Positions 13,278-60,955 of a stretch of 64,000 nucleotides of DNA are shown in pieces (the stretch's first letter is position 1; each line of letters starts with the position of its first letter). The DNA lies in the NCBI GenBank assembly GCA_051530055.1, contig CM121341.1, positions 13,866,784 through 13,930,783 of the forward strand, read 5' to 3'. The notes beneath the pieces were generated by a model. It did not search any database and was not told the origin of the DNA. It was given only the letters and a program-made list of their open reading frames with translations. This DNA comes from Neoechinorhynchus agilis (Eukaryota; Animalia; Acanthocephala). The translations under genes were made by a program, and so were the position numbers.

Positions 13278-13536
13278 TTTCCTTTCCTTAGTTTTGGCAC
13301 CCAGGGGGATTTAAATTCAATAATGACTTATTTCGAGGTATTTCACTTGTCGGATAATTCTGACATTTCCCCCCCCCAAGGTCTGTCATTTTAAATTGTT
13401 TGGATATATGAGAGAAGTTAAGTTTTTTTTCGCAGTGAGAAGACAAACCTCGAGGAAATGTCGGAATTATCCAACGAAATATCGGAAATAAATCAGTGAA
13501 CTTAATTTTGGGGTGTTAAAACTACTGAAAGGAAGT
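13278..13536. mobile_element. MITE-like element, family B (long TIRs of roughly 85 bp)
   Basis: Left arm ...cggataattctgacatttcc is the reverse complement of right arm ggaaatgtcggaattatcc...; a related copy lies at 58566-58795. Confidence 0.8.
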
Positions 13537-14301: not shown

Positions 14302-17300
14302 ATGACGGCTACGCTTTCCATTGAGCTACTTCAAGAACTGCATAAATGTCTTAACTCAACGAAACGAAAGGTTCTTGAGGAATCCTACGAAGAAATCCGT
14401 CGAGCGGAAAAAGTGCGGGTGCTCGTGGACGTTTGTTGTGTACCCGATGGCACTGAAGAGCCTTCGTTGCAAATAAACTATCAATTACGAAGTTTCTGTG
14501 CTGTTTTGCTTCGTAAGGAATTGACCGATTTTCTAGTAGACGATCCGGAAAGCTATGTTAATCACCTGAGTCGCTTTTTTGCTTACTTTAGGACTCACTT
14601 AGACGAGATGAACGCTTACCGAGAATTCGGACGATCGATGAGTCAGGTTTTTGCGGCGACATTTCTGTTTAAGGATGATCACATTGACGATTTGCTTAAA
14701 TTGATGACCCAGTTTTTAATTGAGTGCCTTGAAGACATTAGAAATCCACAAATAGTTTTGATTGGTTTAGACATTTTTGAATGGAACAGTGGTGCTTTTG
14801 ATGAGTATTTGTCCGAACTGATTGAGCGCTTGGACGCAGCGCTGGCGAATATTCTGAAAAATCATGGAACTGAGCTGGGTGTTCATTGTGCTCGTGTGAT
14901 TGTTTCATTTGTAAAGTACTATGAAGGAAAAATGGAATATATTGGTCAAGTAACTCAGACAGCTATCCCTACCTATATTGAAAAAATCTCATTGAACATT
15001 ATGAACGAAGCGATGACGAGAACGCTTCTTGATCTTGTTGAAGATGAATTCGAGATTGTCAAAGGGTTCGTTGGTCAGATTGGAGAAATCGCGATTGTTG
15101 GAATTCAAAGTGGAAGTATAACAGACGAAGTGCATTGTATTTTGATTGAAGTTCTCGCTGATCTCGCAACAGGTTGGCCAAATGAATTCAATGAGAGTTT
15201 CTCCAGTTTTATTCCAACTATTCTGGCCGACTTACTGAATGTAATTACGCGATCGACATCACAATTCCAATTGGACGAATGGGAGGAGATTGATGATCCG
15301 AACGATGAAGTCGATCCAAATTCAATTTTTGTGACTGCCGAGACTGCTTTGGACCGAATATCTACTAGCATCGGTGGAGATATTATTTGGCCTGTGATCA
15401 ATAGACTTGTCTGGCCTGCGTTAACCGAAATTAATGGTAAAAGCGAACCATTAGACGATTGGACCAAAAAGTACGCGTCCTTATTGGCCATCGGCGTGGT
15501 TGGTGAAGGATGTCTTAATTTAATGGAAGGGAGTCTGAAGGAAATTCTTATTCACATTATCCGAAGTGCCGAATCTCACAGCGAACCGCGAGTTCGGTAC
15601 GCGTTGTGCAACACCGTTGGTCAAATGTGTGAGGACTTTTCTCCCGCTATTCAAATCGATTTTCACGACCTGATTTGTCCTCTCCTGATAAAGTACATTT
15701 GCGATCCTAGCAGTCTGAGGGTACGAACTCATGCCGTTTGTGCTCTTGGAAACTTCGTACAATCCTGCCCCAAGTATATTTTGGGATTATATATTCACGA
15801 GATGGCATCTACACTCTTAGCCGCTGTTCAATTAATGGATCTATCAGGCGCTTTTGGGGAGCAATGTTTTTATTCAGTATATTTGTTTACTCGTGAATAA
15901 CTGCAAACAAAGCATACCAAACCAACGAGCGTCTTTACTATTAATATGGGAATTAACTTTGAAATGTAAGACAAATGAATCGCTATCTGATTATCAGAAC
16001 TTATGAGAAAGTCCTTATCCATGCCATAGTTTTTAAAGCGTGCTTTTAGAAGATTGTACTATTTATACGTTATTGTTTCAGAGCATATTAAACCAAATGA
16101 ACTTTAGGTTTAATTCCGGATCCCTCAAGGCATTAAATAATGCGGGTTTCGTCTACTTCCCAGATAACTAAGAATTTTAAACGAAGTCTTTTCTCGTTTA
16201 TTCCCTGCCATTGGAATAACTCAAATGTAGCCACATTTTAATTGATTAATTTTCTCCTAACAATCAAAAGCACTGATCGATTCGATAGGTTTCGAGATGC
16301 TCAAAACAAGTGATCGGCGTTTACTTCTCGATAATTCCTTGAGCACAATGTCAAGATTAACCGAGCAGTCTAGCAATTTAATGGCTAGCTCCTACTCCGT
16401 CTTCATTCAGACGTTCCATCAGATTCTGAATGAAATAAACAGAGAATTGAATTCAGCCGTAGATTCGGACACTGATAGGATTGATGGCTTAAAGATGATT
16501 CGAGGTCGCGTTTTGGAGTGTATTACTCTTCTTGGTTTGGCTGTCGGTAAAGAGACGTTTATGCGAGACAACACCGAGGTAATCAATTTTCTTCTTAATG
16601 AGGAATCGAATGTGAAAGAAGATACTAGCAACGTTGAAGTTAATTTTCTGATCAATTGTTGGTCAAGATTATGCTCACTTCTAGGTTCTGATTTTTCTAA
16701 ATTTATACCTAAGCTATTGCCGATTGCTATTTCGATCGCGTCATTTAAAACCAAGGTAAATCTAATGGATGATCGTGAAGCTAAAGAATTTTTGGAAAAA
16801 GGCAATGATGTGACTTCAGGATGGTATTGTTTGTCTCTTGGTAAACAACAAAATCTTGCTCTCTCCACGGCTGGAATTGAGCTGAAACATCATGCGGTTA
16901 CTCTTATATGCACCTACTGTATGGAACTCGGATTCGAATTTGAACCATATGTTGAGCAAGTTAGAACGATCATGATTGATGCACTTAGGAAAGCGGACGT
17001 TACTGATCGGCTGTCAGTTCTAGACACCACTTAGGAAAAGGTGTTGCGATTCTTGGTACAAATCATAGCTAGAAAATCATCAGGAGTGATAAAATTTGAA
17101 TTGCGGTGATTATAATCCCCGGGTAAAAGACATTTCATATCAATAACATCACCACAATTCAAACTTGATGCATATGTTTAGAATTTCAAATCGCTAGTTG
17201 CAAGAGCAGTAGTACAAAAATGGACATTTCCTTAGGGTTAAAAAACACCCGAGTTTGGAATTCCGGTTTCGTGTAGATGTTTCTCATGAAATAATGCCAT

Positions 17301-18617
17301 AATCGGGGTTAGGTATCTTTTATTGAAAAATACGCGGTGCTCCTTTTTTGTAGAACACCGTTTTGTACACCTTTTGGCCACTCAATGAACTTTAGTTTCT
17401 CTTCACCCGACTAACTTACGTTCGCTTGCAGTAAAAAAACAGTATTCACCTCCATTAAAACGGCGGCAGCGGAATGTCTGCCTCATTTGCTTTCATGTGT
17501 TAGAAACCGTGAAAGTCTTTGCGAATTGACGAATGAATTCATCCAAGAACTGTGCCAAGCATGTTTTAACGAAAGTGAATACGACGTAAGGTCTGAACTT
17601 ATAGGTTCAATGAGTGAATGCACAGACAAATTTTTTTTCCGTGCCGAGAATGAATTCAACAATCTTAGAGAATGCGCTCTCAAATTGGAAGTTTATGACT
17701 TACTTTTGTCGACACTCGTTTCCAAACTTGACGGATACGTAAATTGTGGAGACAGAGGAGAACCGCGATCGGTTGAGCTTATTAAGATTTCAGATTGTGT
17801 TCATGTTCTGTTCAGATATCTTAAAAACGATTTTCTTGGCAGATTTAAACAAGACTTTTTACCCATTTACCTGAGTCTTCTTACATCAAATCAACCTTCA
17901 TATAACCGACAATGGTCATTGTGTTGTTATGGCGACGTCATATCTTATTGTGGACTTGGGGCTGCATTGGATATAGCTCCTAATATCGTACCGTACATCG
18001 CTCCGATGATTCAGGACGAACATCCGAACTCGAGACAAGCCTCATCGTATATCATTGGCCTTCTTGCACTTGACGTTGCTCCTCACAACGAAGAGATCAA
18101 GCGATTTGTTCAGTCATGTATCCCAGCTCTCCAGTCCGCTGCGACTGGACCTCAACGGCACTCAGCAATGAACCTAATGGCTACCGAAAACGCTGTGAGC
18201 GCGATTGGCAAAATCTTACTCGCTGATTTGGCTCCTAATAGAAGCTCACTGCTATCAGAATGGATACAATATCTACCAATTTGGGCTGATAGTGAGGAAT
18301 GTGAACATGTCTACTCGTTTTTATGCGAACTTATCGACCGGAGAGACCCGGTTGCTATGGGTGGACAAGATGAACCCAATCTACCGTATTTAATCCGTCT
18401 TATAGCCGAATGTCTTCTTCGTGAAGGTATTGACAGAAAAGAGAATACCATTAAGAAGGTAGCCCGTCTATTCGAAAAACTTTCTAGGGGAGAACAAGCT
18501 CAATGGAATTCTTGTCTTGCTGTGTTGAACGACCGTCATAAAACAGCTATAGACCAAGCCGTCGTTGATGCATCGCTGGTGGCCAACAAAGATCAATGGG
18601 AACATCAGAGAAAATAA
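14302..18617 (+). CDS. IPO5: Importin-5 / karyopherin beta-3 (HEAT repeats), interrupted by two TIR-bounded inserts
   Basis: AETALDRI, EPRVRYALCNTVGQMCEDF, RVRTHAVCALGNF, RGRVLECITLLGLAVGKETF, TAAAECLP, RQASSYIIG, ATENAVSAIGKI, LPIWADSEE motifs across three ORF blocks. Confidence 0.93.
15833..16287. other. TA-flanked, inverted-repeat-bounded insert 1 in the IPO5 coding sequence (453 nt removed)
   Basis: Left TAATGGATCTATCAGGCGCTTTTG vs reverse complement of right TATCGAATCGATCAGTGCTTTTG (18/24 by hand); excision leaving one TA gives CAA TTA GGT TTC GAG ATG in frame. Confidence 0.8.
16986..17433. other. TA-flanked, inverted-repeat-bounded insert 2 in the IPO5 coding sequence (446 nt removed)
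   Basis: Left TAGGAAAGCGGACGTTACTGATCGGCTG vs reverse complement of right TACTGCAAGCGAACGTAAGTTAGTCGGGTG (21/30 by hand); excision gives CTT AAA AAA ACA GTA TTC and corrects the frameshift. Confidence 0.82.
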
Positions 18618-18819: not shown

Positions 18820-19460
18820 CTAACCTTTTTACCCGGCATTGTCCGGAGGTTACTTATGGAATTTTTTACACATTTAGGAGCATTGTTCGTGTGCAGAGAA
18901 AAAAGAAGTGAATAGTTTTAAAACTATATGTCATGTATTTCATTTTAAAACTTGAGCAAGGATTGTTCTATCACACAACCAGTTGTGATCAGTATAAGGG
19001 AAAGCGACGGCATTGCAAAAAATGTGAGGAGAGGAAATTTTTCCTGTTTAGGCATGAACAGAGAAAGCACTTTTTGCGTGAACGCTTTAGCATTTGTGTT
19101 TTCCACAAGTTGCACTCTCATATTTGTGCGTAACGTAAGTGTTTTGAACATGTCTTTAAAGCGGTGAAGCGTTCAGTCAAGCATTGATTTCGTGAGCCAT
19201 TGTTAGCTTAAGTATGAATAGAAGCGTTTCCCTGAAGTCACCAGCAAAGAGCACCGTAGATCCTCCCAACAGTTTATAATTGTTCCGCAGGTCTTTCAAC
19301 GTCGTATTAAGCGCCTGAAGAGATTTATCATGTTCCATTGTGCACTCAATCCGTACTTGGTTATATTGCACAAGGGATTGTGTGCTATGTTTATAGGTAA
19401 CTTCAGTGCTGAATGTTAATCCCTGATTAAGCAACGACAAGCTCGATTTCCCCACCTTGT
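18820..19460 (-). mobile_element. Helitron remnant (PIF1-type helicase fragment plus 3' hairpin)
   Basis: ECTMEHDKSLQALNTTLKDLRNN..LGGSTVLFAGDFRETL and LTLRTNMRVQL; terminal ctccggacaatgccggg hairpin followed by TTAG|T at about 18820-18848 on the minus strand. Confidence 0.85.
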
Positions 19461-28564: not shown

Positions 28565-28670
28565 CATGACCCAGATCGGTAGGCTGCGTGCCCAACAAAA
28601 AATTATCAGCTGTGTAAGGAATGTTCACTTCAACACTTAGAGAAAATATCTAACTGGCTGGCCAGAAAGT
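28565..28670 (+). repeat. Partial copy of hairpin element family A
   Basis: ccagatcggtaggctgcgtgccca...aattatcagc...ctggctggccag matches the right arm and tail of 42350-42445 and 60865-60945. Confidence 0.7.
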
Positions 28671-35893: not shown

Positions 35894-38800
35894 TGATGTA
35901 AATAACCTGGCAAAATCCACGAAAATGCTCTGGAATTCGTCCACTTAGCTAATTTTTATTTGACGGAACATAAAGCACGAATAAGAGGCTCAAAAAGTTT
36001 TGTGAGCATATATAAAGGATGCATCTCATTAACTGTCTTTTTAGCTGGCAATCACACTTGACAATAGTCTCTAAGGCGAAAGTTTCAGTTGTTAACAGAC
36101 TTGGACGTGTAGTGGATGCATGAGGGGAAAACTTTATGCAGCACCAAAAAACTGACAGCTTGTATACTTTCAATTATTAGCAAATTTCGTTTAAATAAGA
36201 TGGATAAACAGACGCATAATATAGTATATTATAATGTCCTGGTAATTCGCAATAATCGAACCGCTTTCTTGGATGACCGATTTGTACGTTCCTCCGATTC
36301 CACTCATTGAGATTTTTCTTAGATTATTATTATTATTCTTGAACGATGTTAGATTTTGCATTATTTTAAGAGCGAACAAAGGCGTAAATACTGAATGGTA
36401 AGGCATATACAAGGCTTTTATTTGTAGTCTTGATTGAAAAAATTGGAAAGACCAACGTGATATTTGCTCATATTATTCGGTAAGTTTTAGTTAAATATCA
36501 TGCAAGAATGTCCCAACATCGGGTTTTACTCCAATTAGTCTATAATGCATTCTTTCAATCATTTTCAGTAGAGTGATTTGTCTTGAAAGGGGACGAGCTT
36601 TTAAAGGTACAAAATGGAAAATCAAATGCTGACTTTTTCACACTGCATTTGTTTGCTGGAACACATTACTTTGTATCATAGAGAATTGTCGTCGGGGTGA
36701 ATTTGATTCGAGTTTGGCGATGTTTTTCCCCCGGATTGTTGTTGGTGTTGATTATTTATTTTAAAATATTTCGTAAGCATCCTTAGCGATTTCCAATCGA
36801 CAGGAGAAGGAAAAACACCGTATGGACTTCGGACAAGCATCAATAATACAGGCTGAGGCTAATTTACGAAGGAGATTGGTAATGGAGGCAATATACATCA
36901 CAGGGAATGTAAGCATGGAGGGTAACAAAGCGAATCATACGCTAGTACTTCCGAAAATTCTTCACAAAATAAAACCAAAACGTTAGATCACCGCAGCTTG
37001 TACGTCGAACCCGCGCATCCACGCCTATAGTCCAGTTTTGACTTTAGCTTAATTTGTAGACATAACTGAAGAGGTAAGCAAAAAACTTACGATATATTTT
37101 AAAATAAATGATTAACATCAACAACAATCCGAGGGAAAAGCATCGCCAATGTCGAAAAATTACTTTGTGTTCGCAAAACTCTTCGTTCGCGGAAAATATA
37201 TGTTGTTGTGTAGATATCCATTTATGAAGTAATTATGATGGTGAACTGAAGGAAAAAAATTATGAATATATTAATCAGAATTTTCGACCAATGCGTTGGT
37301 CTTCTTCAGTGATTGTCAGGAGAGGAAAATACAAGTAAGCTTTGTCAAATGTCTATGGATTTTTTGAATTTATCTTTTCAGACATAAGGAATCGTGAATT
37401 TTATTCGTACTATGGAACGTGAAACTAAGCGGATTTCCATCGCTCATGGTTCATGTTTGATAGATTTTCTCATGAAAATGCTTTGCAGATTTTCTAGAGC
37501 TGAAACAGTTCTTTAAGGAAATTAGAGTGCGTCCCATTTAGCATCATTTAATAAGGTCAGTTTGTTCCATGGTCATGTTAGGAAAAACTTATCATTTTTG
37601 AATTAGTCAAACGGACAAAAATCAGTCTATTAAAAACGGAATGGGGAAATTTTGTTCTTAGTTAAAAACGAACGCTATCAAAGTCATTGTATTTGCGTTT
37701 CATCAAATTTTTACACCATGCTTGATTTGAATCCGAAGCGATCACTGAGAAATAGTTTCCGAGCCGTGTTATTCATGCTGTTGAAAACTATATTTAAAAA
37801 ATCTAATGTTTTCACTTCCAATATCGCTAATAATAAAATCAAAGTTCCCGCAATATGAATTAATGTCTCTCTAAGGATCAAGATATAGCTTTCTCCGTGA
37901 CCCTTATACCACCGTAAGGGATTTACTTATCTTGTGCGTTTTGTCAGCGTCTAGCCATTTTGCAAACACCCACATACAACACTGTATGCACTTGCATAAG
38001 ACGAGTGGGAAAACAAGACTGTAGCGTTTCACATCTCGAAAGGTGATGTAAATAACCTGGCAAAATCCACGAAAATGCTCTGGAATTCGTCCACTTAGCT
38101 AATTTTTATTTGACGGAACATAAAGCACGAATAAGAGGCTCAAAAAGTTTTGTGAGCATATATAAAGGATGCATCTCATTAACTGTCTTTTTAGCTGGCA
38201 ATCACACTTGACAATAGTCTCTAAGGCGAAAGTTTCAGTTGTTAACAGACTTGGACGTGTAGTGGATGCATGAGGGGAAAACTTTATGCAGCACCAAAAA
38301 ACTGACAGCTTGTATACTTTCAATTATTAGCAAATTTCGTTTAAATAAGATGGATAAACAGACGCATAATATAGTATATTATAATGTCCTGGTAATTCGC
38401 AATAATCGAACCGCTTTCTTGGATGACCGATTTGTACGTTCCTCCGATTCCACTCATTGAGATTTTTCTTAGATTATTATTATTATTCTTGAACGATGTT
38501 AGATTTTGCATTATTTTAAGAGCGAACAAAGGCGTAAATACTGAATGGTAAGGCATATACAAGGCTTTTATTTGTAGTCTTGATTGAAAAAATTGGAAAG
38601 ACCAACGTGATATTTGCTCATATTATTCGGTAAGTTTTAGTTAAATATCATGCAAGAATGTCCCAACATCGGGTTTTACTCCAATTAGTCTATAATGCAT
38701 TCTTTCAATCATTTTCAGTAGAGTGATTTGTCTTGAAAGGGGACGAGCTTTTAAAGGTACAAAATGGAAAATCAAATGCTGACTTTTTCACACTGCATTT

Positions 38801-40193
38801 GTTTGCTGGAACACATTACTTTGTATCATAGAGAATTGTCGTCGGGGTGAATTTGATTCGAGTTTGGCGATGTTTTTCCCCCGGATTGTTGTTGGTGTTG
38901 ATTATTTATTTTAAAATATTTCGTAAGCATCCTTAGCGATTTCCAATCGACAGGAGAAGGAAAAACACCGTATGGACTTCGGACAAGCATCAATAATACA
39001 GGCTGAGGCTAATTTACGAAGGAGATTGGTAATGGAGGCAATATACATCACAGGGAATGTAAGCATGGAGGGTAACAAAGCGAATCATACGCTAGTACTT
39101 CCGAAAATTCTTCACAAAATAAAACCAAAACGTTAGATCACCGCAGCTTGTACGTCGAACCCGCGCATCCACGCCTATAGTCCAGTTTTGACTTTAGCTT
39201 AATTTGTAGACATAACTGAAGAGGTAAGCAAAAAACTTACGATATATTTTAAAATAAATGATTAACATCAACAACAATCCGAGGGAAAAGCATCGCCAAT
39301 GTCGAAAAATTACTTTGTGTTCGCAAAACTCTTCGTTCGCGGAAAATATATGTTGTTGTGTAGATATCCATTTATGAAGTAATTATGATGGTGAACTGAA
39401 GGAAAAAAATTATGAATATATTAATCAGAATTTTCGACCAATGCGTTGGTCTTCTTCAGTGATTGTCAGGAGAGGAAAATACAAGTAAGCTTTGTCAAAT
39501 GTCTATGGATTTTTTGAATTTATCTTTTCAGACATAAGGAATCGTGAATTTTATTCGTACTATGGAACGTGAAACTAAGCGGATTTCCATCGCTCATGGT
39601 TCATGTTTGATAGATTTTCTCATGAAAATGCTTTGCAGATTTTCTAGAGCTGAAACAGTTCTTTAAGGAAATTAGAGTGCGTCCCATTTAGCATCATTTA
39701 ATAAGGTCAGTTTGTTCCATGGTCATGTTAGGAAAAACTTATCATTTTTGAATTAGTCAAACGGACAAAAATCAGTCTATTAAAAACGGAATGGGGAAAT
39801 TTTGTTCTTAGTTAAAAACGAACGCTATCAAAGTCATTGTATTTGCGTTTCATCAAATTTTTACACCATGCTTGATTTGAATCCGAAGCGATCACTGAGA
39901 AATAGTTTCCGAGCCGTGTTATTCATGCTGTTGAAAACTATATTTAAAAAATCTAATGTTTTCACTTCCAATATCGCTAATAATAAAATCAAAGTTCCCG
40001 CAATATGAATTAATGTCTCTCTAAGGATCAAGATATAGCTTTCTCCGTGACCCTTATACCACCGTAAGGGATTTACTTATCTTGTGCGTTTTGTCAGCGT
40101 CTAGCCATTTTGCAAACACCCACATACAACACTGTATGCACTTGCATAAGACGAGTGGGAAAACAAGACTGTAGCGTTTCACATCTCGAAAGG
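35894..40193. repeat. Head-to-tail tandem duplication, 2 x 2150 bp (35894-38043 and 38044-40193)
   Basis: Identical text and ORF translations at an offset of exactly 2150; no differences seen by eye. Confidence 0.97.
36790..36930 (+). mobile_element. Penelope-like GIY-YIG endonuclease C-terminal remnant (second copy at 38940-39080)
   Basis: HRMDFGQASIIQAEANLRRRLVMEAIYI pattern. Confidence 0.6.
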
Positions 40194-42179: not shown

Positions 42180-42212
42180 GTGTTCATTAATTACATGACG
42201 TATAATTTTAAT

Positions 42213-42452
42213 AAGTATCTATGTGCGGCCTTTTGCACAGTTGATAATTTTCATTGGGCACGCGTTCCCACCGATCTGGTTCAGGGAAGGGCATAAAATC
42301 ACTTAATACCTTGAAACATACGGTTATGAGTTTGTACATTCCTCCGGAACCAGATCAGTGGGGCTGCGTGCCCAAGGAAAATTATCAGCCGTGCAAAAGA
42401 CAGCACATAGATGCTGAATAAAAAAAGTTACCGGCTGGCCAGTCTTCAAAAA
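42213..42452. mobile_element. Hairpin element family A (about 70-bp inverted arms plus 3' tail)
   Basis: Arm tatctatgtgcggccttttgcacagttgataatttt... pairs with ...aaaattatcagccgtgcaaaagacagcacatagat; flanked by tataa(t/c)tttaat direct repeats. Confidence 0.8.
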
Positions 42453-43920
42453 TATAACTTTAATCTTCGCATAATGGCTTGGCAGGAAAAAGAACCGGTT
42501 TTGATCACCGAGAATCTTGGATTAAGACTTTCAATGGCCAGTTGTTTTGAACTTAAAAAGATGCAAAATAATTGCGTTCCGCATAATCCAGAAAAAGAAA
42601 ATTAATTAGTTCAAATCATTAGGCTAATAAATTTTCAACCGACATCGATTCGCAATGTAGGTGATTATTTAATTGGTGGTGAACGTAATTCAAGTTTGTA
42701 CAAAGGATTCCTCACCCGTCGTTAGCGAACTAACCGTGTTTATCGGCAGATTGCTATCATCTAATTAAATGAAATCGAATCCGCAAAGGAGAGTTAGTCG
42801 ATGATAATGCCCGGCGACTTCTGAATTTTAATTAGCGTAGTTTTTGATCATTCTTCAATAATAGAATATTGATTATCTATTCTTCAATAAGGTCTACCTG
42901 CGCAATGCCGGATAAACTGGGTTGTTAAGAGTAAACGGTAATTAATTTCTGAGTCATGGTATCAAAAGTAATAAGTTGAAAATAAGATTATTGCTCAGCA
43001 AATTAAATTTGTGAACAGGATACGAAATCTAATTCTCATGATTCCATAAGTGAAGCCATTGAAACTAATTCAATGGTTTTCTTTGGCGTCGAGTAAGATT
43101 TTCTGTAACATGGTTTTAAATCTTCATTTAGATTTTAAGCACTGATATTGATTGTAGGCGATGTGTATTCGATAATGAACTAAAGAACAAAGCATTAACG
43201 TCAAAGCAAGAACCATGAAGTGTAGTTGTGTTACGTTTCGTTCATATTGACGAAGATTTAAGCACCTCGTTTATAATGTTATGAAGTTAAAGTATTCTTG
43301 AATAGTTTTTATTCGCACAACAATATGTTTTGGTGATTTATTTATCAATGCAAAATAGAAAGATTATCCAAAATGCCGCATGAATTTCTGATTATTACAG
43401 AAAGACGACAATTTCGCATTGTTGTGGTAAAAGATAATAATCGATAAGATAGATGTCCTTAAGTAAAAATGTATAAAGTTGATTATGCCATGGACATTCG
43501 TTGTAAAATCACGTTTCTGAGGAGAACGTTTTGATTAGTCATCGAATAATGGTCAACATGACCGACCAGACTACGAATATCGGTAAACCAATTTGCGCCG
43601 GGAGTGGATGACGGGTCCGTTCGGGTTTGAAAGTTTGTGGTTCTTGTTTGAAGGGGAGTTTGCTAGGTCGACACCTAAAGAAGAATATAAATCATCAGAC
43701 TATTCGTCATTATCTCGATTTTTTACCCTCTTCATGTATTCATCCCATATTCAACTTTGCTCCCTACGACCGAAAACTTGACTTCTGGGCGGAAACGAGC
43801 TCCCGTGCCCACGGCAAATCATGGATGTGATCACCTTATGTCTCCTTTCGCTAAATCACATTGAAATTGGCAAAGGATATGTTTCTATGTCTTGGTCGCA
43901 ATTTGAGCGGTTCAGATTCT

Positions 43921-44152
43921 TACATCCCCTGCTCGACTTTTTGGCATGAAGCCACACCGAATTCTTACATCAGAGAAGTGATCGAACCATTTAGCCTCTT
44001 ATGCATACGGTAATGAGTTTCTACATCTCTCCGGATTCTCAGATACCTCCAGGAGGCGGGATTTATCAGTGAGTTTCCACCCTTCCGTTGTATTACTCTC
44101 TAATGTAAAAGATCGGTGTGGCTTCATGCCAAAAAACCGAGGAAGGGATGTA
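43921..44152. mobile_element. MITE family C, TA-flanked, TIRs of about 50 bp (Tc1/mariner-like)
   Basis: TAcatcccctgctcgactttttggcatgaagccacaccga vs reverse complement of tcggtgtggcttcatgccaaaaaaccgaggaagggatgTA. Confidence 0.85.
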
Positions 44153-44159
44153 ATAATCT

Positions 44160-45330
44160 CAATCAATAGTGCCGGCTTGCCAGTAACGTTTGAGAAATAA
44201 ATGCGGTTGTTGATTTTGAAGAAGATTGCGGGTTCGGTCGGGTGGGAATATTCGGTCATGGAATGTGGTGGGAAATGGTCTTTTAGCTTGTAGGAGAGTT
44301 TGCGAGGTTGGGTATTTCCTCAGGTTCATTAAGGAGCTTAGATATAGGGGGTGCGAGTTGTAGGAGGATGAAATGAATTTGGATCACGAGTGTTGCGCTC
44401 CTGCGAAAAAGGGGAATAAAATGTGGTGAAAATTGTGGTGGCAGTGTTGAGAGAGTTTTGATATGCATTTTGTTAGCGGGGGGAAATCAACTGTGCAAAT
44501 TTAAGACTCTTCTATGAAAGGTTTCAAGACGACGATTTATGTTGCAAATACGGGGTAACCGTAGTTGGGGGATGGTAAGATACAGCAGAAGTTAAATTTG
44601 TAGAGATCGGGCGAAGGGATTCCTAAATGTCGGATGCGTTTGAGGAGATAAATTTTAGAGGTGTTGAGGTTGAGGGAGAGAGTGATGTGCGAGTCTCATT
44701 TCAAATTTGATTGAAATTGGAGACGTGAATTCTTAGGGAGGTGACTCGTAGGATGTCATTTTTTTTTTATTCTCGAAATTACTTTTCTTTACATTCACCA
44801 CCTCCCACCAAATTCCAGCTTTTGTCCTTCCTCGACCGTCGCCATCACGCTGGCAACATTGCCCCGTTGTACTGCCAGCGAGATATTTTGTCGAAGAAAT
44901 AAGCCTGCTCTTGAGTCTCCGGTTGCCTGATGGATGTAGGGTTGCGCGAGAATGAGGGGATCGCTTCGAAGCTTTTTGAGAAGTTCAGATAGAATTTGTG
45001 ATTGGTGCAGAAATCTTTGACGTGGATGATTTCTTTAAATGTTAAGGAGAGGGAGAGGTTGGATGATGATTGAGTGATGAGGGTGAGATCGTCGGCATAT
45101 AAGAAAAGTTTAGGGTCGGAGAGGTTTGAGGTCGTTTAGGAAAATATTAAAAAGAAGTGGTGACAACACAACACCTTGAGGTACTGCTCTGATGAGGGAT
45201 ACTTTAATCGGGGAGATAGCCCGGCAGTGAATGTATTGTTGGCAATCGTGAAGATAAGAGACCAGGCAGTGGATCTGCCTGCCACGCGTTTGGACCGAAA
45301 TCGGAGCAGGCCTGGAGTAGTAGTAAGTTG
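44160..45330 (-). mobile_element. Decayed CR1/L2-like LINE reverse transcriptase and C-terminus
   Basis: AVPQGVVLSPLLFNIFLNDL, KLFLYADDLTLI, IYLLKRIRHLGIPSPDL, RLETFHRRVL with frameshifts. Confidence 0.9.
44757..44975 (-). mobile_element. 5'-truncated CRE-clade element with poly(A) tail, nested in the LINE
   Basis: ATGDSRAGLFLRQNISLAVQRGNVASVMATV followed by aataaaaaaaaaa; the host LINE reading resumes on both sides. Confidence 0.85.
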
Positions 45331-46048: not shown

Positions 46049-47933
46049 TCAAGGGCTAATCAATTTATTCTCAATACACTCACGTTCATGCAAGTTCCAA
46101 AGAGCAGTAACAAGCTCACACAGTCCGATTTTGCTAGTATTTTTTGACATGATCCTTAAGAGAAAGATCCCATCGGTTTTCAATGCATCATCAATGAACC
46201 TGCTGATGCTACCACGTTTGATGTCCGAACCGTAGTCGGAGATAATAAGATGTGAGTGAATGAATCGTCTTCTACTCCATGGGAAACATATACACCACAG
46301 CCATATGAGAATAGATACGATGGTTAGGACAAGAACAACACTGTACCAGAACCATATAATGATGAAAATCTTTTCGTTGAACATATTCACGGGTAAAACA
46401 CACTGAACTGTATGTTTATGATTATTGTCAGCTAAATTGCGAACAATAAAGTCACATAGCGTGACCCGGGGAAATCTTTTATGGATGTTCCATTCTTCTC
46501 CATCAATAATGTTTTTTAAGAGATCGTAACCAAGTGTGGCGTAGCTCTCACCAATGACAAATTTTAAGCTGTAAATTAGCCCGGAACAAATAACAACATA
46601 TTGCCAAAACACGGGATTACAGTCTGGCTCCAAGCAACGGAAAAAGGTACAATTATTATATAGAAAGCATACTCAAGAGAAGCGATATTAACAGTTTTAA
46701 CTACAAATAAGCAGCATATCAGGTAGTCCAGAGTGCGTCCTAAAAATGGAACCACTTAAATTCCCGATTGCGTCGTATGTTACATTAATCGCCAGGGACT
46801 ACATTTTTTCATAGATTTTCACCTATATCCCTAGAAGTTGGAAAAATCCCACTAAGTTTATTTTGAGACTAAATCCCGTGCGTTGGTTTAAGCGAATTTC
46901 ATGGATAAATAGGCAGTTACTAGTGAAACCGACGTACTTGTGCTCGGCATTATTCGGGCGAAAAGTAGGTTTAACCTCTGTGTCGGGTCTAAAGCCAGGA
47001 AACGTACCCTTTGATTATTCTGATGATGAGCATAGAGTGCATTGTCGATATAGATGGCAGCGTGATCGATTGCTTCAGTCTTGACATCGAAATCAAGCTC
47101 GTCAAAATTGTCGACGGAGCGAGCAATTAAACTTAAATCAAATCCCTTTCTTTGGAGAAAATTGTGCCATGCTACACTTGGCAAGTAAAATAAGAGTGCC
47201 ATACATGGCAAGATGAATGGTACCCATTGATAGTATGGAACAATGTTTCGACTTTGATGACTTAGAGCATATGTGTATGAAATGATTTCGGAACCGGAAA
47301 CAGTGAAGTCGGTATTTAGGAAAAGAACCACATTAGAATATACAGTTCTCCATTAATTATGGAAAAGAATTACTGTGCTCTTGGATAAAATATTCACGAC
47401 TAAACAGTTTTTTGGAATGAAAGCAGTAGGTAATTTTATAGAACTCGTCTCTTAGCCGGTTGTCATTAAACATTTATGATATTTTAGATCTATTATAAAA
47501 ATGCAAAAAGCAGGATTGTAAATGTTTAGCGCATGCCTGATCGCCATTAATCAGCACTAATAAGGGCGGGTAAAAATGCCAAATTTTTTCAATAAAGCGA
47601 ATCCCGGTATTTCAGACACATATACGATAAATGATCCGTGTACCTGGATGCATCTAAGGAAAGTTCATTACCATTATGTCCACAATGTACAAGATTGTAT
47701 GAATTGGAAACCCAGCAGATATAATTCGCATATTCAACATGAGCTCCCGTGAACTGAGCTGGTGTCCAGCATGCGATTGGATCGCCTACATACTGCTTCG
47801 TACTGATTATCACAGTGAACAGCACAAGCAGTAGGACTGTGTACCGTCGACAGATTTTATCGAATTGGTCATCATCACAATTACACTTAAGCTTTTTGAT
47901 TTTTGTAATTGCATCAAGGAAACCAGCGACCAT
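46049..47933 (-). CDS. Innexin (gap-junction protein), interrupted by TIR-bounded inserts
   Basis: DDDQFDKICRRYT, KQYVGDPIACWTPAQFTGAHVEYANYICW, YYQWVPF, RFPRVTLCDF, TVQCVLPVNMFNEKIFIIIWFW. Confidence 0.96.
46599..46890. other. TA-flanked, inverted-repeat-bounded insert in innexin TM3 (290 nt removed)
   Basis: TATTGCCAAAACACGGGATTACAGTCT vs reverse complement of the other end TAAACCAACGCACGGGATTTAGTCT (20/27); excision turns GCT TAA into GCT TAT GTT (LVTAYLSMKFAYVVICSGL). Confidence 0.85.
47270..47624. other. TA-flanked inverted-repeat element at the first innexin ORF break (353 nt)
   Basis: Ends share TATGTGT(C/A)TGAAAT; excision gives TCG TAT GCT in frame, but a canonical CAG|gtacac...taag intron also works. 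Confidence 0.6.
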
Positions 47934-55730: not shown

Positions 55731-56780
55731 TCAATGTCGAACTTCAGTCGTAAGATTTCCCTCGAGTAAACTTACTAGACGTTGGCATTGACGATTGATT
55801 GTTTCGCTTTTCTTTTCCGAATCTGTATCATCTATGAAATGCCTTAGCTGTTCTACATGCCGACTGTGTTCTATAGTCACCACTGGAACATTTATGTATT
55901 GACAAAATAAGTCAAACTCGGACGAAGGTTGGAACACATCTATATGTGTGCCACACTGAGGACATTTGCAGGAAGAGCAATTAACAACACATCCTACTAC
56001 TGGTAGATTTAGTCTTTTGCAAAATTGGAATTGTCGTTTGACGTCGTCCGTTGAAATGCGATGAGCATGAGTGAAGAGCGGGATTTCCGAAAAAACAAGT
56101 TTAGGATAAAGGAATCGACTACTTTTACGTCAGGATGTTTCATATAAAGAATTCTGCTGGTCGTCTTTTGGAAACCCTCGTTCATTTACGAGTATAACAG
56201 CCGTTGGTTTTACAAGACCTGCCAGTGTAATGTGTTCATCACTTGTTCCTGGTGGCGTATCAACGACCATATAGTCCAATTCTCCCCAATCTACATCAGC
56301 GACGAGTTGTTGAAGAAATCCATTTTTACGTGGACCGCGCCATATCAATGCATCCGACGGTTCAATGAAATACTGTGAAGACACAACAGCCAAATTTTCT
56401 TTCACCATGACCGGAGACCAACCTTTGGATGTCTGGTAGACGTCGTTATCAGTCGCATTTAAGAGCTGAGGTATGTTAGGTCCACAAAGATCACCATCGA
56501 TTATCCCAACAGAATGCGATTCATCAGTAGATAGGCCGAGGGCTAAGAGGGTAGCTATAGTGCTTTTGCCAACACCTCCTTTACCGGACATAACCATGAT
56601 TCGATTTTGCCAAGCCGATATCGTATCTTTTATTCTCCTTAACTTCGCCGGATCGTTGTTAGATTGAGCTGATGCGCATTGTTGGCGCGATGGACATCCT
56701 TCACAAGCAGCAGCTTGACCTGGTAATCCAGCACTAGGATCTGAACTTGGACATGCGTTGGGAACATCATCTGTTGACAT
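55731..56780 (-). CDS. NUBP1: Cytosolic Fe-S cluster assembly factor NUBP1/Nbp35
   Basis: N-terminal four-Cys cluster (C..CEGCPSRQQC), MSGKGGVGKST, DGDLCGPNIP, IWRGPRKNG, VDTPPGTSDEH, CKCPQC. Confidence 0.93.
56066..56185. other. In-frame, stop-containing, inverted-repeat-bounded insert in NUBP1 (117 nt, ATG direct repeat)
   Basis: TGAACGAGGGTTTCCAAAAGAC vs reverse complement TGAAGAGCGGGATTTCCGAAAAAAC; removal gives AVILVNAHRISTDDVKRQ, colinear with the recalled AVIITTPQEVSLQDVRKE. Confidence 0.72.
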
Positions 56781-56900
56781 TTGAATAATTTGAGACAAAA
56801 ATGCAAAATCTGAAGACAATCTGAAGGAATTCCGGAGCATATTCGCCATTATGATAACTAAAGGAAACATAATTTAATGCGTTCAAATTAAAACTTCCGT

Positions 56901-59546
56901 CTATTCAAATTGTGTTACAGGTCTCCGTAACTTTGATTTATAGTCAATAAAGAGGGTCTCCATACACACAACCGCCACACATTGTTCTGCTTTCGACTTT
57001 GATGTATGCCAATTGATCGTAGTGTAATTCGAATCCAAAAAGCGTAGCTTAGATTTGAATACTCTTTCAGCCTCTGACTTTTGAATTGTCGAATATTCTG
57101 GTTTTTGCAATCCATGGGCATTAGCATACTCACTAAGAACCGTTTTCGGGTTGCATGTTTTCAAATGCAAACTTCTTTTCATCGATCAACAATAATCGTT
57201 AGTTCAGATGAGCAAGGTATCAAACCTATCGTACACAACGAATAGTTGCACAACTTCAGGTTCTTCAGACATAACTGAGTCTTTATCCCTACTAAAGATT
57301 AAGGCAGACATCCTCGTGTCTATAGGCACATAGTCCGGTGTATTGACATCGTATTTGCGACTAAAGCGTTGTTATACGATTAAGAATTTTTACGTAAATT
57401 ATTTTCGAAATGGCAATAGAGCCTAATGTGTATATTTTCAGGCTTAGAATATCGTTTTTCAATCCAGCTGAACAATGGTTATTCGCTAAGGTTTTTAAAC
57501 CCAAAAGTGGTATAAAAATCCAACAAATAAACAGTCAGAACCGCATAAACCCTTTTTGTTGTTGGGCACAAACTTCCGAAGTAACCATACTACTTAATCT
57601 AGAAAGAAAAAATCTTACCAAATATCCAGAATCGAAATGCCCATTCCAATACCAGCAGCCAGCGTATGTTCATTTTCGAAAGCTTTAAAATGTTTTAAAT
57701 TATAAGCGACATCGCTTGCTCTCAGATTTAAGTTTATAGCGTGGCGTAGAAATCGTTCAATAAGCTTATTTCCGTCGTCAGAAGATCCAAAGACGGCAGG
57801 GTTTTTTCGTGCCGATCTACCGATCATAACACTCAGTCCTTTGTTCTTTTCCATATATTCAACTAATTGTTGATGCCTTTGAACGGTATTTGAAACTCCA
57901 TTGATGGTTAAATTAAAATTTGGAAAGATATTATATAGTTTTTCAAATATTTGTTCATTGCATGGCGTTCTGTAACTTTGTTCAGGTGTGCGACCGTGCA
58001 CCGTAAGTCTACTTACTCCAGCGTTGATCAAACTCCATACAAATTCAATCGTTCGTTCATCCTTTTATAAAAACGATAGAGATTATGAAACAAAACAGGT
58101 AAAAAGACGCACTTTTTCAAATATTCGTATTTTGCACGAAACAGGAATCTTGAGGTTATTTACTTCAATGATGTGATGCTGAAAACGTAGGTCGAATTAT
58201 GAGTTTTTGTGAAATATAGGAGACAAATTCATTGTCAAACCTTACGGTCGCATCACATACGTTCTCTCTGTACAGCAGTTAAGATGGACCAAAGGGACGA
58301 AAGAGAAAAGAAGATCATCAATAGAAAACCTCGGGTATAAACAAATTAGAATTATGATGAGCATACTCTCGGGCATGACATATTTTATTGATTTGAAATA
58401 TACGAACGAGGTAACCTTGCCCTATCAGTCATTTTTTGTACGCTTTTACGGCGAAAAGGCGAGGTTATCTCGTTTATTATTTCAAATAAATAAAATATGT
58501 CATGCCAGGGAGTATGCTCATCGCAATTCTAAGAAAAAGAATTTTTCGCCTAATAAAAGGAGAAATTTTCTCTTGGTAGATTTGCATCCCACGGATTTAA
58601 ATTCACTGAATTATTTCCGATATTTCACGTCGGATAATTATGACATCTCTTCAAGGTTTGCCATAGCCTACATATTAGAAAATTTGTGAAACAATGACAA
58701 ACCTCGAGGAAATGTCAGAATTATCCGATGTAAAATATCGGAAGTAAATCAGTGAATTTAAATCCCATGTGTGGCAAAATTACCAAAAGAAAGTATCTTT
58801 AAGACAAATAGGAGAAATGACAACATCACATCATTCATCGACCAAGTTTTCAACAATCTAAATTCTGAAGTTTACGAAAAAGATTTAAGTATTTATAAGA
58901 GTAAACCTTCACTGCAAGGTCAGGTGTCTTCATTAATGCAGATCCCATACCAGCCTAGAAGATAATTAGAGCTGATTCGTTACGAAGGCGCAGAATTTCA
59001 CCAACATGAGTTGAGAACGGCTTAGGGCATCCCATATTAACATCGATACCAGCAACGTCGTTTTCACTAAAAAAATAAATTACAGAAGGAGACAAAGAGC
59101 AAGTGAACCTACACAATTTTGGCTGCTTTCAGCGCATGATCAGGATCATTGGTTCCCTTTTTAACGACAATCAAAATTCCTTTAAATCATGAGAACTAAC
59201 CAATTGTAAAATAACTCGATCTCGCTCATGCTCACAAGTCTGAAATAATATCTTTCCAGTCTTTGCAATCACAAAATTAACAGTTTTTGTTTCCTCTATA
59301 AAAAACGTATAGATCTCAAATGCATAGGTTTTCTCAATATTAACCATCAAATATCCTCGTACAGCACAGCAACGACTTATCGATTATTTCCTGGTCGAGC
59401 AAGGACGTAAGACAAACATTTATATTTCCACTAACATATGTATAAGCCAGATCAGCCCCATAATCCAAGACGGTCAAACGAAACGGAAGCGTTGAAGCGC
59501 GGACCATTGGTGCTGCAATTTTGGCTTCTCTCTTGTGTACATACAT
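56901..59546 (-). CDS. DUS2: tRNA-dihydrouridine(20) synthase with C-terminal dsRBD
   Basis: AAPMVRASTLPFRL..LDYGAD, GIDVNMGCPK, GMGSALM, IPVSCKIRI, LTVHGRT, VMIGRSARKNP, dsRBD PKTVLSEY...SKSKAEQCVA. Confidence 0.94.
58162..58842. other. GT-flanked, inverted-repeat-bounded insert in DUS2 (679 nt removed)
   Basis: Both ends carry T(G/C)AATGATGTGATG(T/C)TG; excision gives IVENLVNNLKIPVSCKIR, colinear with the recalled ILSTLVKGTRRPVTCKIR. Confidence 0.78.
58566..58795. mobile_element. MITE family B copy nested inside the DUS2 insert
   Basis: Long inverted arms; right arm gacaaacctcgaggaaatgtc.gaattatcc is shared with 13441-13500. Confidence 0.8.
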
Positions 59547-60169
59547 TCGATTTTTAATAAATAGGCGATCTTCAAATACAATTTCGCTTTAGACCGAAAA
59601 AGCGTTCATCGATACCATCCAATTTTGATGGACGATATTTTGTTCATCGATCGTACATGACAAACGGATAGCAACTGCGAACCTGACCACCACTTTACTA
59701 CGAAGACGTTCTCGAAAGAAACCAACAGAAAGCAGCTATGTGTGCCGAATGCGAAAGAAGTTATTAATCCGAAAAAAGTATTAGAAGAAAACCTGAGTTT
59801 TTTCGTTTTATGGCAAAGAAATTGAAATGATTTTATTTTAAATCCGATATTTCAGCACAATATTGTAAAGTTGTTAGTAAAATCATTTCAATTTCTTCGC
59901 CATAAAACAACCAATATCAACATTTCAATCTAAAAAAGTTATTTTTTGATTCTATTCAAAAAGAGGCGATTGCAAAAACTGACCAATAGAAAGTTGTGTG
60001 GTCGGAATCGCAGCGGCCCATTAAAAATTGATGGCTTATCTAACTTACTTTCTATTGGTTGGTATAGCACCTCAGATTTCAGTTGACTAATTTATTATTT
60101 AAAATATCTACACAGTCGTGTGCTTTTACCAAGGTAGAGGACGGATATTAACACTGTTCTTATATTAAG

Positions 60170-60470: not shown

Positions 60471-60801
60471 AGTGCGGTCCATAATTATGAAGTGTTGAGA
60501 CAATCCGTGAGAAATGGAACACAGAACCATTTGATATGCGTGCATCAAAGTTCTGTCCCTTTGTTAGTGGCACTAATTTCCTTAAATGCCGTTTACGTAT
60601 CATGAACTCTTCTTCCTTGCAAATCATACAGATGAAGTCAGGTAAGGCACAAGATTGTGCCGAAATTTTGGATTCAATAAAAAATTAATTTTTACGCCAT
60701 AAACAAGCATGAATAGTTCAATTTTCAAACAGATTATAAGTTTGTACATACGTGAGGAGAGGCTTCCTTGCGAAATATTTCCATTCAATTAAATATGTTT
60801 T

Positions 60802-60955
60802 TAAGTGTGGCTTTTTTCACGGCTGATAATTTTGTTTGGGCACACAGCCCTGGTCTGTCCTGAGTCGTGTGCCCAGGGAAAATTATCAGCCGTGAAAAAC
60901 GACCACACTTAAAACACACAGAAGAGAAGTTACCGGCTGGTCCGACTTTAAAAAA
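60802..60955. mobile_element. Hairpin element family A copy with a 17-bp flanking direct repeat
   Basis: Inverted arms of about 50 bp, tail ttaccggctgg, A-run; tcaattaaatatgtttt at 60785-60801 and 60956-60972. Confidence 0.85.

What the first reader, a model, noticed from the sequence alone, without database searches (positions are those of the whole stretch)
15833..16287. IPO5 insert 1: TA-to-TA excision restores HEAT-repeat spacing
Removing 453 nt gives AAVQ-L-G-FEMLKTSDRRLLLDN, residue-for-residue colinear with the recalled human IPO5 segment [22 protein letters not shown]. The TIR match (18/24) starts exactly at both TAs. The best canonical alternative (C|gtgaat...gatag|GT) would add about 20 residues.
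Basis: partly seen in the sequence, partly recalled or inferred. Interest (0 to 1): 0.85.

Follow-up and report, generated by a model that had tools for sequence, protein, structure and literature searches.

The report
Transposon-like insert splitting worm importin gene
A 453-base stretch with the marks of a small "cut-and-paste" transposon sits inside the coding sequence of the importin-5 gene of the parasitic worm Neoechinorhynchus agilis; deleting it exactly restores the protein seen in relatives, but the sequence alone cannot show how, or whether, the worm removes it.

Summary
The window is from Neoechinorhynchus agilis (Acanthocephala), chromosome CM121341.1. A diverged importin-5 gene (14302-18617, +) is interrupted at 15833-16287. 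Deleting 453 nt from TA to TA is in frame and gives AAVQLGFEMLK. The closest relative (P0013) reads AVQVGFEMLK, with 56% identity over 137 residues and no gap. None of 18 homologues has an insertion at this site. The ends form an 18/24 inverted repeat anchored on both TAs, which about 2 in 10,000 random TA pairs reach.

The "excision" reading is not shown. The host is an animal, not a ciliate. All 19 introns I verified are GT-AG. TA-flanked miniature transposons are abundant nearby.

Best reading: a TA-duplicating transposon insertion that now has to be removed like an intron. The likely 3' site is the AG formed by the right TA plus the next G. The likely 5' site is a weak internal GT, which would leave 10 or 19 extra residues. 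Both candidate donors score poorly, and the public annotation splits the gene here. Precise removal, or a broken allele, therefore stay open. Public RNA-seq (PRJNA1223661) would settle it.

This is a new member of a known kind, of moderate interest.

The parts
14302..15832 (+). IPO5-like importin, coding block 1 up to the insertion site (ATG at 14302; ...AAVQ, then the first base of the Leu codon)
   Evidence: ORF and Pfam hits TPR_IPO5, Importin_rep_4 and HEAT_EZ. The public gene model P0003 is this ORF read through to the stop at 15898-15900.
15833..15834 (+). Left TA (one copy of the putative target-site duplication; positions 2-3 of the Leu codon TTA)
   Evidence: Sequence; in-frame junction.
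15833..15856 (+). Left arm of the terminal inverted repeat
   Evidence: 18/24 matches with one 1-nt gap against the right arm, anchored at the TA.
15835..16285 (.). Body of the insert (451 nt). It has no long ORF, no Rfam match, and no other copy in about 95 kb of this genome.
   Evidence: blastn against the window and against L004/L006; Rfam; RNA fold z=0.1.
16265..16287 (+). Right arm of the terminal inverted repeat, ending in the right TA (16286-87)
15866..15871 (+). Candidate cryptic 5' splice site T|GTTTTT (phase 1); would leave 10 extra codons
   Evidence: In-frame product. PWM score 2.7 bits, 70th percentile of all GTs, at the low end of true donors.
15893..15898 (+).
   Evidence: In-frame product. 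PWM score -0.27 bits, 25th percentile of all GTs, below 18 of 19 true donors. A similar GTGAAC donor is used in a verified intron.
16287..16288 (+). Candidate 3' splice site AG, made of the A of the right TA plus the first G of the flanking Gly codon
   Evidence: Sequence. PWM score 3.0 bits, 82nd percentile of all AGs, typical of true acceptors.
16288..17012 (+). Coding block 2 (GFEMLKTSDRR...). The public model P0002 starts at the ATG at 16297.
17013..17431 (+). Intron 2, an ordinary GT-AG intron (CT|GTCAGT...TTGCAG|T, 419 nt)
   Evidence: Hand model. It reproduces the public product P0002 exactly.
17432..18617 (+). Coding block 3, through to the stop codon

Best explanation
A small non-autonomous DNA transposon of the TA-duplicating kind (451 bp plus a duplicated TA, with imperfect terminal inverted repeats) inserted into a previously uninterrupted, well-conserved part of the coding exon of the importin-5 gene of Neoechinorhynchus agilis. 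The target was ...CAA T|TA|GGT TTC....

The rest of the gene is intact, so the insert is most likely removed from the transcript as a newly born intron. The ordinary spliceosome would use the AG created by the right-hand TA plus the flanking G (16287-88) and a weak GT inside the element (15866 or 15893). That leaves 10 or 19 element-derived codons as a disordered loop and changes the conserved Gly.

Shown: the insertion, the TA pair, the inverted repeat, the restoration of the ancestral frame, and the in-frame GT-AG options. Inferred: the transposon origin, that the gene is functional, and which sites are used. My estimates: an insertion relative to the ancestor about 0.9; of transposon origin about 0.65-0.7; removed by GT-AG splicing about 0.45-0.5.
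For: Insertion relative to the ancestor:
- The TA model aligns to the closest relative P0013 at 56% identity over 137 residues with no gap, while the canonical model needs one 19-residue gap.
- None of 18 homologues has an insertion at the site.
- Human IPO5 (6xte) shows an 18-residue gap.
- Seison nebaliae genomic DNA is uninterrupted across the site, and Pomphorhynchus has an intron 4 codons away, not at the site.

Transposon marks:
- TA at both ends and an anchored inverted repeat of 18/24, P about 2e-4.
- This is the best of the 26 in-frame TA pairs.
- TA-flanked miniature-transposon families are abundant in this genome, with one copy pair 800 bp upstream of this gene.

Splicing:
- All 19 verified introns are GT-AG, with lengths 41-57 nt or 104-436 nt.
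- The acceptor scores as typical, and a GTGAAC donor is used elsewhere.
- Two in-frame products exist.
- AlphaFold places the 19 extra residues as a low-confidence loop (pLDDT<50 at exactly residues 83-101) between well-folded helices with pLDDT above 90.

Gene otherwise intact:
- 1147 sense codons with a correctly spliced intron 2.
- The assembly consensus comes from a pool of about 50 worms, so the insert is probably the common allele (PMC12690905).

Known principle: transposon insertions become introns by co-opting splice sites from the element or from the target-site duplication (review PMC11282704).
Against: - Both candidate donors are poor. GTGAAT scores below 18 of 19 true donors and below 75% of all GTs in the window; GTTTTT sits at the low end.
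- About 46% of random inserts at this site would offer an in-frame GT, so the canonical option carries no weight of its own.
- The 19 codons look slightly non-coding by codon usage (likelihood ratio 0.33), and CFYSVYLFT is hydrophobic, which is unlike a surface loop.
- The insertion would break one of the best-conserved stretches of the protein and replace a conserved Gly.
- The RNA-seq-guided public annotation did not splice it and split the gene. This is weak evidence, because that annotation also errs at canonical introns.
- No second copy of the element was found in about 95 kb, and the ends do not resemble known Tc1/mariner termini (from my own knowledge).
- 'TAG' is the usual intron end here, so the right-hand TA is less diagnostic than it looks.
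Confidence: 0.48

Rival explanations
1. Precise TA-to-TA removal. Either the DNA segment is excised in somatic cells and the two TAs are joined, as with ciliate germline-limited elements, or the RNA is cut at non-GT-AG boundaries guided by pairing of the inverted repeats. Either way the protein is exactly colinear with its relatives.
For: Exact restoration of a highly conserved stretch, including the Gly codon GGT kept intact next to the TA. Weak canonical donors. The ends can pair: 18/24 as DNA, about 20/24 with G-U pairs as RNA, and the terminal 9 pairs appear in the minimum-energy fold. The RNA-seq-guided annotation found no canonical intron here.
Against: Exact restoration follows from any transposon insertion and says nothing about removal. 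The host is an animal. From my own knowledge, no animal is known to excise gene-internal segments precisely. All 19 verified introns are GT-AG. The three equivalent boundaries (TA..GA, AA..AT, AT..TA) match no known splice class. The ends do not fit the Paramecium consensus TAYAGYNR (TAATGGAT / TATCGAAT). The whole-insert fold is no more stable than shuffles (z=0.1). No second clear case exists in about 95 kb: the NUBP interruption has no TA/repeat solution, and homology favours the canonical product for the innexin intron.
Confidence: 0.14
2. A disrupting insertion. The element is not removed, the reading frame stops at 15898-15900, and this copy of the gene is a null or recently dead allele. 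It would be tolerated because it is polymorphic or because another importin covers its function.
For: Poor donors. The public annotation ends one model at the read-through stop and starts another at ATG 16297. Gene loss is widespread in this lineage, with 40-45% of metazoan BUSCOs missing (PMC12690905). Miniature transposons are active or abundant.
Against: Both halves keep long open frames and conserved motifs, and intron 2 is intact. The inverted repeat is only 75% matched; if the arms were once identical, that implies time enough for a dead gene to decay. The assembly is a consensus of about 50 worms, so the insert is probably the common allele, which is unlikely for a null of a normally essential gene (inference).
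Confidence: 0.2
3. An ordinary spliceosomal intron of non-transposon origin (396 or 423 nt) next to a lineage-specific loop insertion. The TA pair and the inverted repeat would be coincidence.
For: In-frame GT-AG solutions exist. The size is similar to the verified long introns of 419 and 436 nt. This protein has other lineage-specific insertions not tied to introns, for example 13 residues at NRELNSAVDSDTD. 'TAG' acceptors are common. The unanchored end similarity is unremarkable (P=0.07).
Against: The anchored repeat has P about 2e-4 and is the best of 26 alternatives at exactly the colinear pair. The extra residues begin and end exactly at the TA boundaries. The Gly codon survives intact at the boundary. 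There is no intron at this position in Seison or Pomphorhynchus. The donors are weak.
Confidence: 0.18

Closest known systems
TA-duplicating DNA transposons and their miniature derivatives (Tc1/mariner superfamily; Stowaway-like MITEs)
   Same: TA at both ends, consistent with a 2-bp target-site duplication. Terminal inverted repeats start right after the TA. The element is small (451 bp) and non-coding. Removing the element plus one TA rebuilds the empty site. TA-flanked MITE families occur in the same genome.
   Different: The inverted repeat is weak (18/24 with a gap). No second copy was seen in about 95 kb. The termini (ATGGATC.../TCGAATC...) do not resemble typical Tc1/mariner ends (from my own knowledge). 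No transposase was identified.
Transposon-derived introns: introners, and Tc1 insertions removed from C. elegans pre-mRNAs by cryptic splicing (Rushforth & Anderson 1996, cited from memory; review PMC11282704)
   Same: A transposon sits in a coding exon, flanked by a target-site duplication. The 3' AG can be co-opted from the duplication plus the flank. Removal would keep the gene working, and imprecise removal would leave extra residues.
   Different: Introners are high-copy families that carry good splice sites at or near their ends. Here there is a single copy, the candidate donor lies 33 or 60 nt inside the element, and it scores poorly. Splicing has not been shown.
Ciliate internal eliminated sequences (Paramecium TA-bounded IESs)
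   Same: A short, single-copy, TA-bounded segment inside a coding sequence, whose TA-to-TA removal restores the reading frame. It has degenerate inverted-repeat ends reminiscent of Tc1/mariner.
   Different: The host is an acanthocephalan animal with no known nuclear dimorphism. The end consensus TAYAGYNR is not met. The genetic code and the introns are those of an ordinary metazoan. There is no evidence of DNA excision.
Non-canonical, inverted-repeat-bearing introns of Fritillaria borealis, euglenids and Amoebophrya (PMC11282704, PMC7789003)
   Same: Species-specific position, inverted-repeat ends that could pair in RNA, duplication-like repeats at the junctions, and boundaries other than GT-AG if removal is precise.
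   Different: In those genomes non-canonical introns are numerous. Here 19 of 19 verified introns are GT-AG and no second convincing case was found.

Membership tests
TA-duplicating DNA transposon / MITE (Tc1/mariner-like) | 2-bp TA target-site duplication flanking the element | tested here: met
   TA at 15833-34 and 16286-87. Removing the body plus one TA restores the homologous protein without a gap. Caveat: the right TA is also part of a common TAG acceptor.
TA-duplicating DNA transposon / MITE (Tc1/mariner-like) | Terminal inverted repeats starting at the element ends | tested here: met
   18/24 with one gap, in register with both TAs; P about 2e-4; best of 26 local alternatives. Weak in absolute terms: the unanchored alignment gives P=0.07.
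TA-duplicating DNA transposon / MITE (Tc1/mariner-like) | Membership of a repeated family (other copies in the genome) | tested here: inconclusive
   No copy in the 64-kb window or in about 30 kb of further N. agilis DNA. The remaining 46 Mb could not be searched.
TA-duplicating DNA transposon / MITE (Tc1/mariner-like) | Empty site in a related genome or allele | tested here: inconclusive
   Protein of the closest relative (P0013) and Seison genomic DNA are uninterrupted at the site, but these are distant species. No allele or sister-species DNA is available.
Transposon-derived spliceosomal intron | Removed from mRNA by the spliceosome at GT-AG (or GC-AG) sites supplied by the element, the duplication or the flank | not testable with these tools
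   In-frame GT...AG options exist. The acceptor is typical and the donors are weak. No transcript data are held. The public annotation did not splice it.
Ciliate-type internal eliminated sequence | Host with separate germline and somatic nuclei and programmed DNA elimination | tested here: not met
   The host is Neoechinorhynchus agilis, an acanthocephalan, with an innexin gene and ordinary metazoan introns.
Ciliate-type internal eliminated sequence | TA boundaries with end consensus TAYAGYNR | tested here: not met
   The ends read TAATGGAT and TATCGAAT. The TA is present, but the rest of the consensus (recalled from my own knowledge) is not.
Ciliate-type internal eliminated sequence | Absence of the segment from somatic DNA | not testable with these tools
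   No read data. The assembly is from whole worms.
Importin-5 / Kap121 (host gene) | IPO5-type HEAT/TPR repeat architecture and full-length similarity to IPO5 orthologues | tested here: met
   Pfam TPR_IPO5, Importin_rep_4/5 and HEAT_EZ. Human IPO5 6xte E=2.5e-50 for a 378-residue segment. 974 homologues at E<=1e-10, the best full-length hit from the acanthocephalan Pomphorhynchus.
U12-type (AT-AC) intron | 5' /ATATCCTT and 3' AC | tested here: not met
   The AT...TA variant of the precise boundaries starts ATGGATCT and ends TA.

The most novel reading that the evidence does not exclude
An animal removes a TA-bounded, inverted-repeat-ended insert from inside a coding sequence precisely, giving the junction CAATTA|GGTTTC. 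It could do so by somatic DNA excision in the manner of ciliate germline elements, or by repeat-guided non-GT-AG RNA processing. If so, part of the apparent gene loss and gene fragmentation in the N. agilis assembly would reflect such unrecognised interruptions.
Probability: 0.12. Interest if true: 0.85.

Novelty: new member of a known kind. Interest (0 to 1): 0.42.

Why it matters
If the insert is spliced, it is a snapshot of intron birth from a DNA transposon in an animal. Most documented cases come from algae, fungi, dinoflagellates and tunicates. Here the 3' splice site would be built from the target-site duplication, and element sequence would be added to a conserved HEAT repeat.

In practice, the public N. 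agilis annotation splits this importin into two proteins at the insert. Other models in the window are also truncated or fused. Counts of "missing" conserved genes in this highly reduced parasite may therefore be inflated.

If removal turns out to be precise, it would be a kind of genome or transcript editing not known in animals.

Tried and rejected
- Ciliate germline origin: rejected, because the organism was identified as an acanthocephalan.
- Ordinary intron with good signals: the donors score poorly.
- The in-frame canonical option as evidence for splicing: rejected, because 46% of random inserts would have one.
- Codon-usage test of the 19 extra codons: too weak to decide (likelihood ratio 0.33; true flanking exons score similarly).
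- The annotation split as evidence against splicing: downgraded after finding that the same annotation mis-splices a canonical Dus intron and truncates or fuses NUBP.
- Other copies of the insert: none found in the window, L004 or L006.
- RNA genes inside the insert: none. Unusual RNA stability: none (z=0.1).
- U12-type or other known non-canonical splice classes: the boundaries do not fit.
- A conserved ancestral intron at the site: Seison has none, and the Pomphorhynchus intron is 4 codons downstream.
- A second example that would show a systematic mechanism: the NUBP interruption has no TA/repeat solution. Innexin intron 1 has a TA-anchored 18/24 repeat, but homology favours its GT-AG product.
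- Transcript-derived proteins of this species: none in the protein collections.
- Genomic locus of the closest relative P0013: not on record.
- Insert 2 of the same gene as a TA-bounded element: rejected; it is a clean GT-AG intron that reproduces the public product.

Full report
**What the window is.** The window carries ordinary metazoan genes: an innexin, Rpt2/PSMC1, mitochondrial IF2, a Dus tRNA-dihydrouridine synthase, a NUBP/Cfd1-like ATPase, a beta-1,3-galactosyltransferase and an LSM protein. The Rpt2 product is identical to [quoted passage not shown] on a 19,375,080-bp contig. The IPO5 ORFs map to assembly GCA_051530055.1, chromosome CM121341.1. The host is therefore an acanthocephalan worm, not a ciliate. 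Its 46.2-Mb genome was assembled from a DNA pool of about 50 worms and annotated with BRAKER plus RNA-seq (PMC12690905).

**The gene.** A diverged importin-5/Kap121 gene lies on the + strand from 14302 to 18617, as three long open blocks. The second interruption (17013-17431) is a clean GT-AG intron, CT|GTCAGT...TTGCAG|T. With it, the downstream part reproduces the public protein P0002 exactly. The public annotation splits the gene at the first interruption. P0003 is block 1 read through to a TAA at 15898-15900, and P0002 starts at the ATG at 16297.

**Checking the observation.**
- TA lies at 15833-34 and at 16286-87. Deleting 453 nt joins the blocks in frame, giving AAVQLGFEMLK.
- The two ends match 18/24 as inverted repeats, with one 1-nt gap, in register with the TAs. 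About 2e-4 of random TA-TA pairs in this window do as well.
- Of the 26 in-frame, stop-free TA-TA deletions possible at this locus, only this pair is colinear with homologues, and it has by far the best repeat (18 against 14 or less).
- An unanchored alignment of the ends is not remarkable (P=0.07). The whole insert folds no better than shuffles.
It adds 19 residues and changes Gly to Arg. A second option, T|GTTTTT at 15866, adds 10 residues and changes Gly to Cys.

**Is it an insertion?** Yes.
- The closest relative that spans the site (P0013, a UniParc entry of unknown species) reads ...LLSAVQVGFEMLKHSH....
- The TA-deleted product aligns to P0013 at 56% identity over 137 residues with no gap. 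The canonical product needs one 19-residue gap exactly at the site.
- None of 18 homologues from other animals has extra residues there.
- Human IPO5 (PDB 6xte) shows an 18-residue gap.
- Seison nebaliae genomic DNA is continuous across the site. Pomphorhynchus laevis has an intron 4 codons downstream, not at the site.
- AlphaFold models the 19 extra residues as a stretch with pLDDT below 50 (residues 83-101) between confidently folded helices.

**What kind of insertion?** Three features together are the signature of a TA-duplicating DNA transposon of miniature size: TA on both sides, inverted repeats that start at the TAs, and exact reconstruction of the empty site CAA T-TA-GGT. Such elements live in this genome. 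Several foldback families recur in the window and at a locus 800 kb away. Aligned copies of one family all begin TA|G(T/A)TTTG and end CAAAA(C/T)|TA, and two copies lie just upstream of this gene.

Three caveats apply. No second copy of this particular element was found in about 95 kb. The repeat is weak. And 'TAG' is the commonest intron end here (10 of 19), so the right-hand TA also belongs to a normal-looking acceptor.

**How is the gene kept working?** This cannot be decided from sequence.

In favour of ordinary splicing:
- All 19 introns I verified by homology or by exact reproduction of annotated products are GT-AG. They are either 41-57 nt or 104-436 nt long.
- The AG formed by the right TA plus the flanking G scores as a typical acceptor (3.0 bits, 82nd percentile).
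- A GTGAAC donor is used in a verified intron of the Rpt2 paralogue.

Against ordinary splicing:
- GTGAAT at 15893 scores -0.27 bits. That is lower than 18 of 19 true donors and lower than three quarters of all GTs in the window. GTTTTT at 15866 scores 2.7 bits, at the low end.
- An in-frame GT would exist in 46% of random inserts at this site, so its presence proves nothing.
- Codon usage of the extra codons leans slightly non-coding. The first ten look coding-like and the last nine do not, which would favour the 15866 donor if either is used.
- The annotation's failure to splice is weak evidence. The same annotation mis-chooses a donor in the Dus gene, truncates NUBP at an internal TGA, and fuses NUBP with Dus.

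**Ranking.** I rank the readings as follows.
- A transposon-derived insert removed by GT-AG splicing with partial exonisation: about 0.48.
- A disrupted or polymorphic allele: about 0.20.
- An ordinary intron with coincidental TA and repeat: about 0.18.
- Precise TA-to-TA removal at the DNA or RNA level: about 0.14.

Exact restoration of the frame is expected from any transposon insertion. It does not itself argue for precise excision.

**Comparison with known systems.** The anatomy matches TA-duplicating MITEs. The likely fate matches transposon-derived introns, in which splice sites are co-opted from the element or from the duplication (PMC11282704). It also recalls the removal of Tc1 from C. 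elegans pre-mRNAs by cryptic splicing (cited from memory). It resembles a Paramecium germline-limited element in form only. The host, the end consensus and the surrounding intron set all fail that family's defining features.

**Verdict.** This is a new member of a known kind, of moderate interest. The public RNA-seq and genomic reads would decide the mechanism at once.

Noticed in passing
window 56076-56189 (- strand), NUBP/Cfd1-like gene 55734-56780: About 38 extra codons, including an in-frame TGA, lie between the conserved blocks PTAVILV and THAHRISTDDV when compared with PDB Cfd1 (6g2g) and 2ph1. The only GT-AG option (GG|GTTTCC...AAAAG|T, 54 nt) still leaves about 21 extra residues in the conserved 'TTPQ' region. 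There is no TA/inverted-repeat solution. The public model stops at the TGA, and the C-terminal exon is in no model.
   Followed up: partly
window 47262-47644 (- strand), innexin intron 1: This GT-AG intron (CAG|GTACAC...CTCTAAG|T) also has a TA-anchored 18/24 inverted repeat (TAs at 47629 and 47263). A TA-TA deletion would be in frame and add RYTDHL, but alignment to INX-6 (5h1q) favours the canonical product. Two of seven long introns carry such repeats. They may be MITE-derived introns, or end-pairing may be a feature of long introns.
   Followed up: partly
window 42206-42423, 60796-60916, 58346-58532, 58593-58765, 43911-44162, 59787-59926, 13307-13505, 28568-28614; L006 14056-15124 and 20226-20508: Several families of foldback, MITE-like elements (arms 49-80 nt, 78-91% complementary) recur in the window and at a locus 800 kb away. 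Copies of one family (58593, 13307, 13442) are TA-flanked. Two of the elements lie in a Dus intron.
   Followed up: partly
window 17094-17166 (- strand), inside IPO5 intron 2: A hairpin with a 19-bp perfect stem (z=-2.8 against shuffles) and a weak Rfam hit to mir-36_2 (21 bits, E=0.26, below the gathering score). The 3' arm contains UCACCGC, close to the mir-35/36 seed as I recall it. It is a possible antisense intronic microRNA.
   Followed up: partly
window 56130-59546 (- strand); L004 4820-8236: The public BRAKER models are unreliable here. Dus is split at 59064 by a mis-chosen donor, although the homology-consistent intron is canonical (GT|GTAGGT...TTTTTAG|T). The Dus 3' part is fused with NUBP into one 452-residue model. 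This may inflate 'missing gene' counts for this species.
   Followed up: partly
window 16990-17012 (+ strand), just upstream of IPO5 intron 2: Eight or nine residues (KADVTDRL) have no counterpart in the closest relative P0012 or in human IPO5. They may be a lineage-specific loop or exonised sequence next to a canonical intron.
   Followed up: partly
window 19177-19455 (- strand): A fragment of a PIF1-like helicase (Pfam PF05970, E=3.6e-6), probably a decayed Helitron-type or PIF1 remnant just downstream of IPO5.
   Followed up: no
window 36328-37106 and 38478-39256: Identical hits 2,150 bp apart in the inverted-repeat scan point to a tandem duplication of at least about 780 bp.
   Followed up: no
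L006 10001-11553 (CM121341.1, about 13.07 Mb): A second Rpt2/PSMC1 gene (P0171) lies on the same chromosome, 77% identical to the window's copy. Both share two intron positions, which suggests an old duplication of a proteasome ATPase.
   Followed up: no
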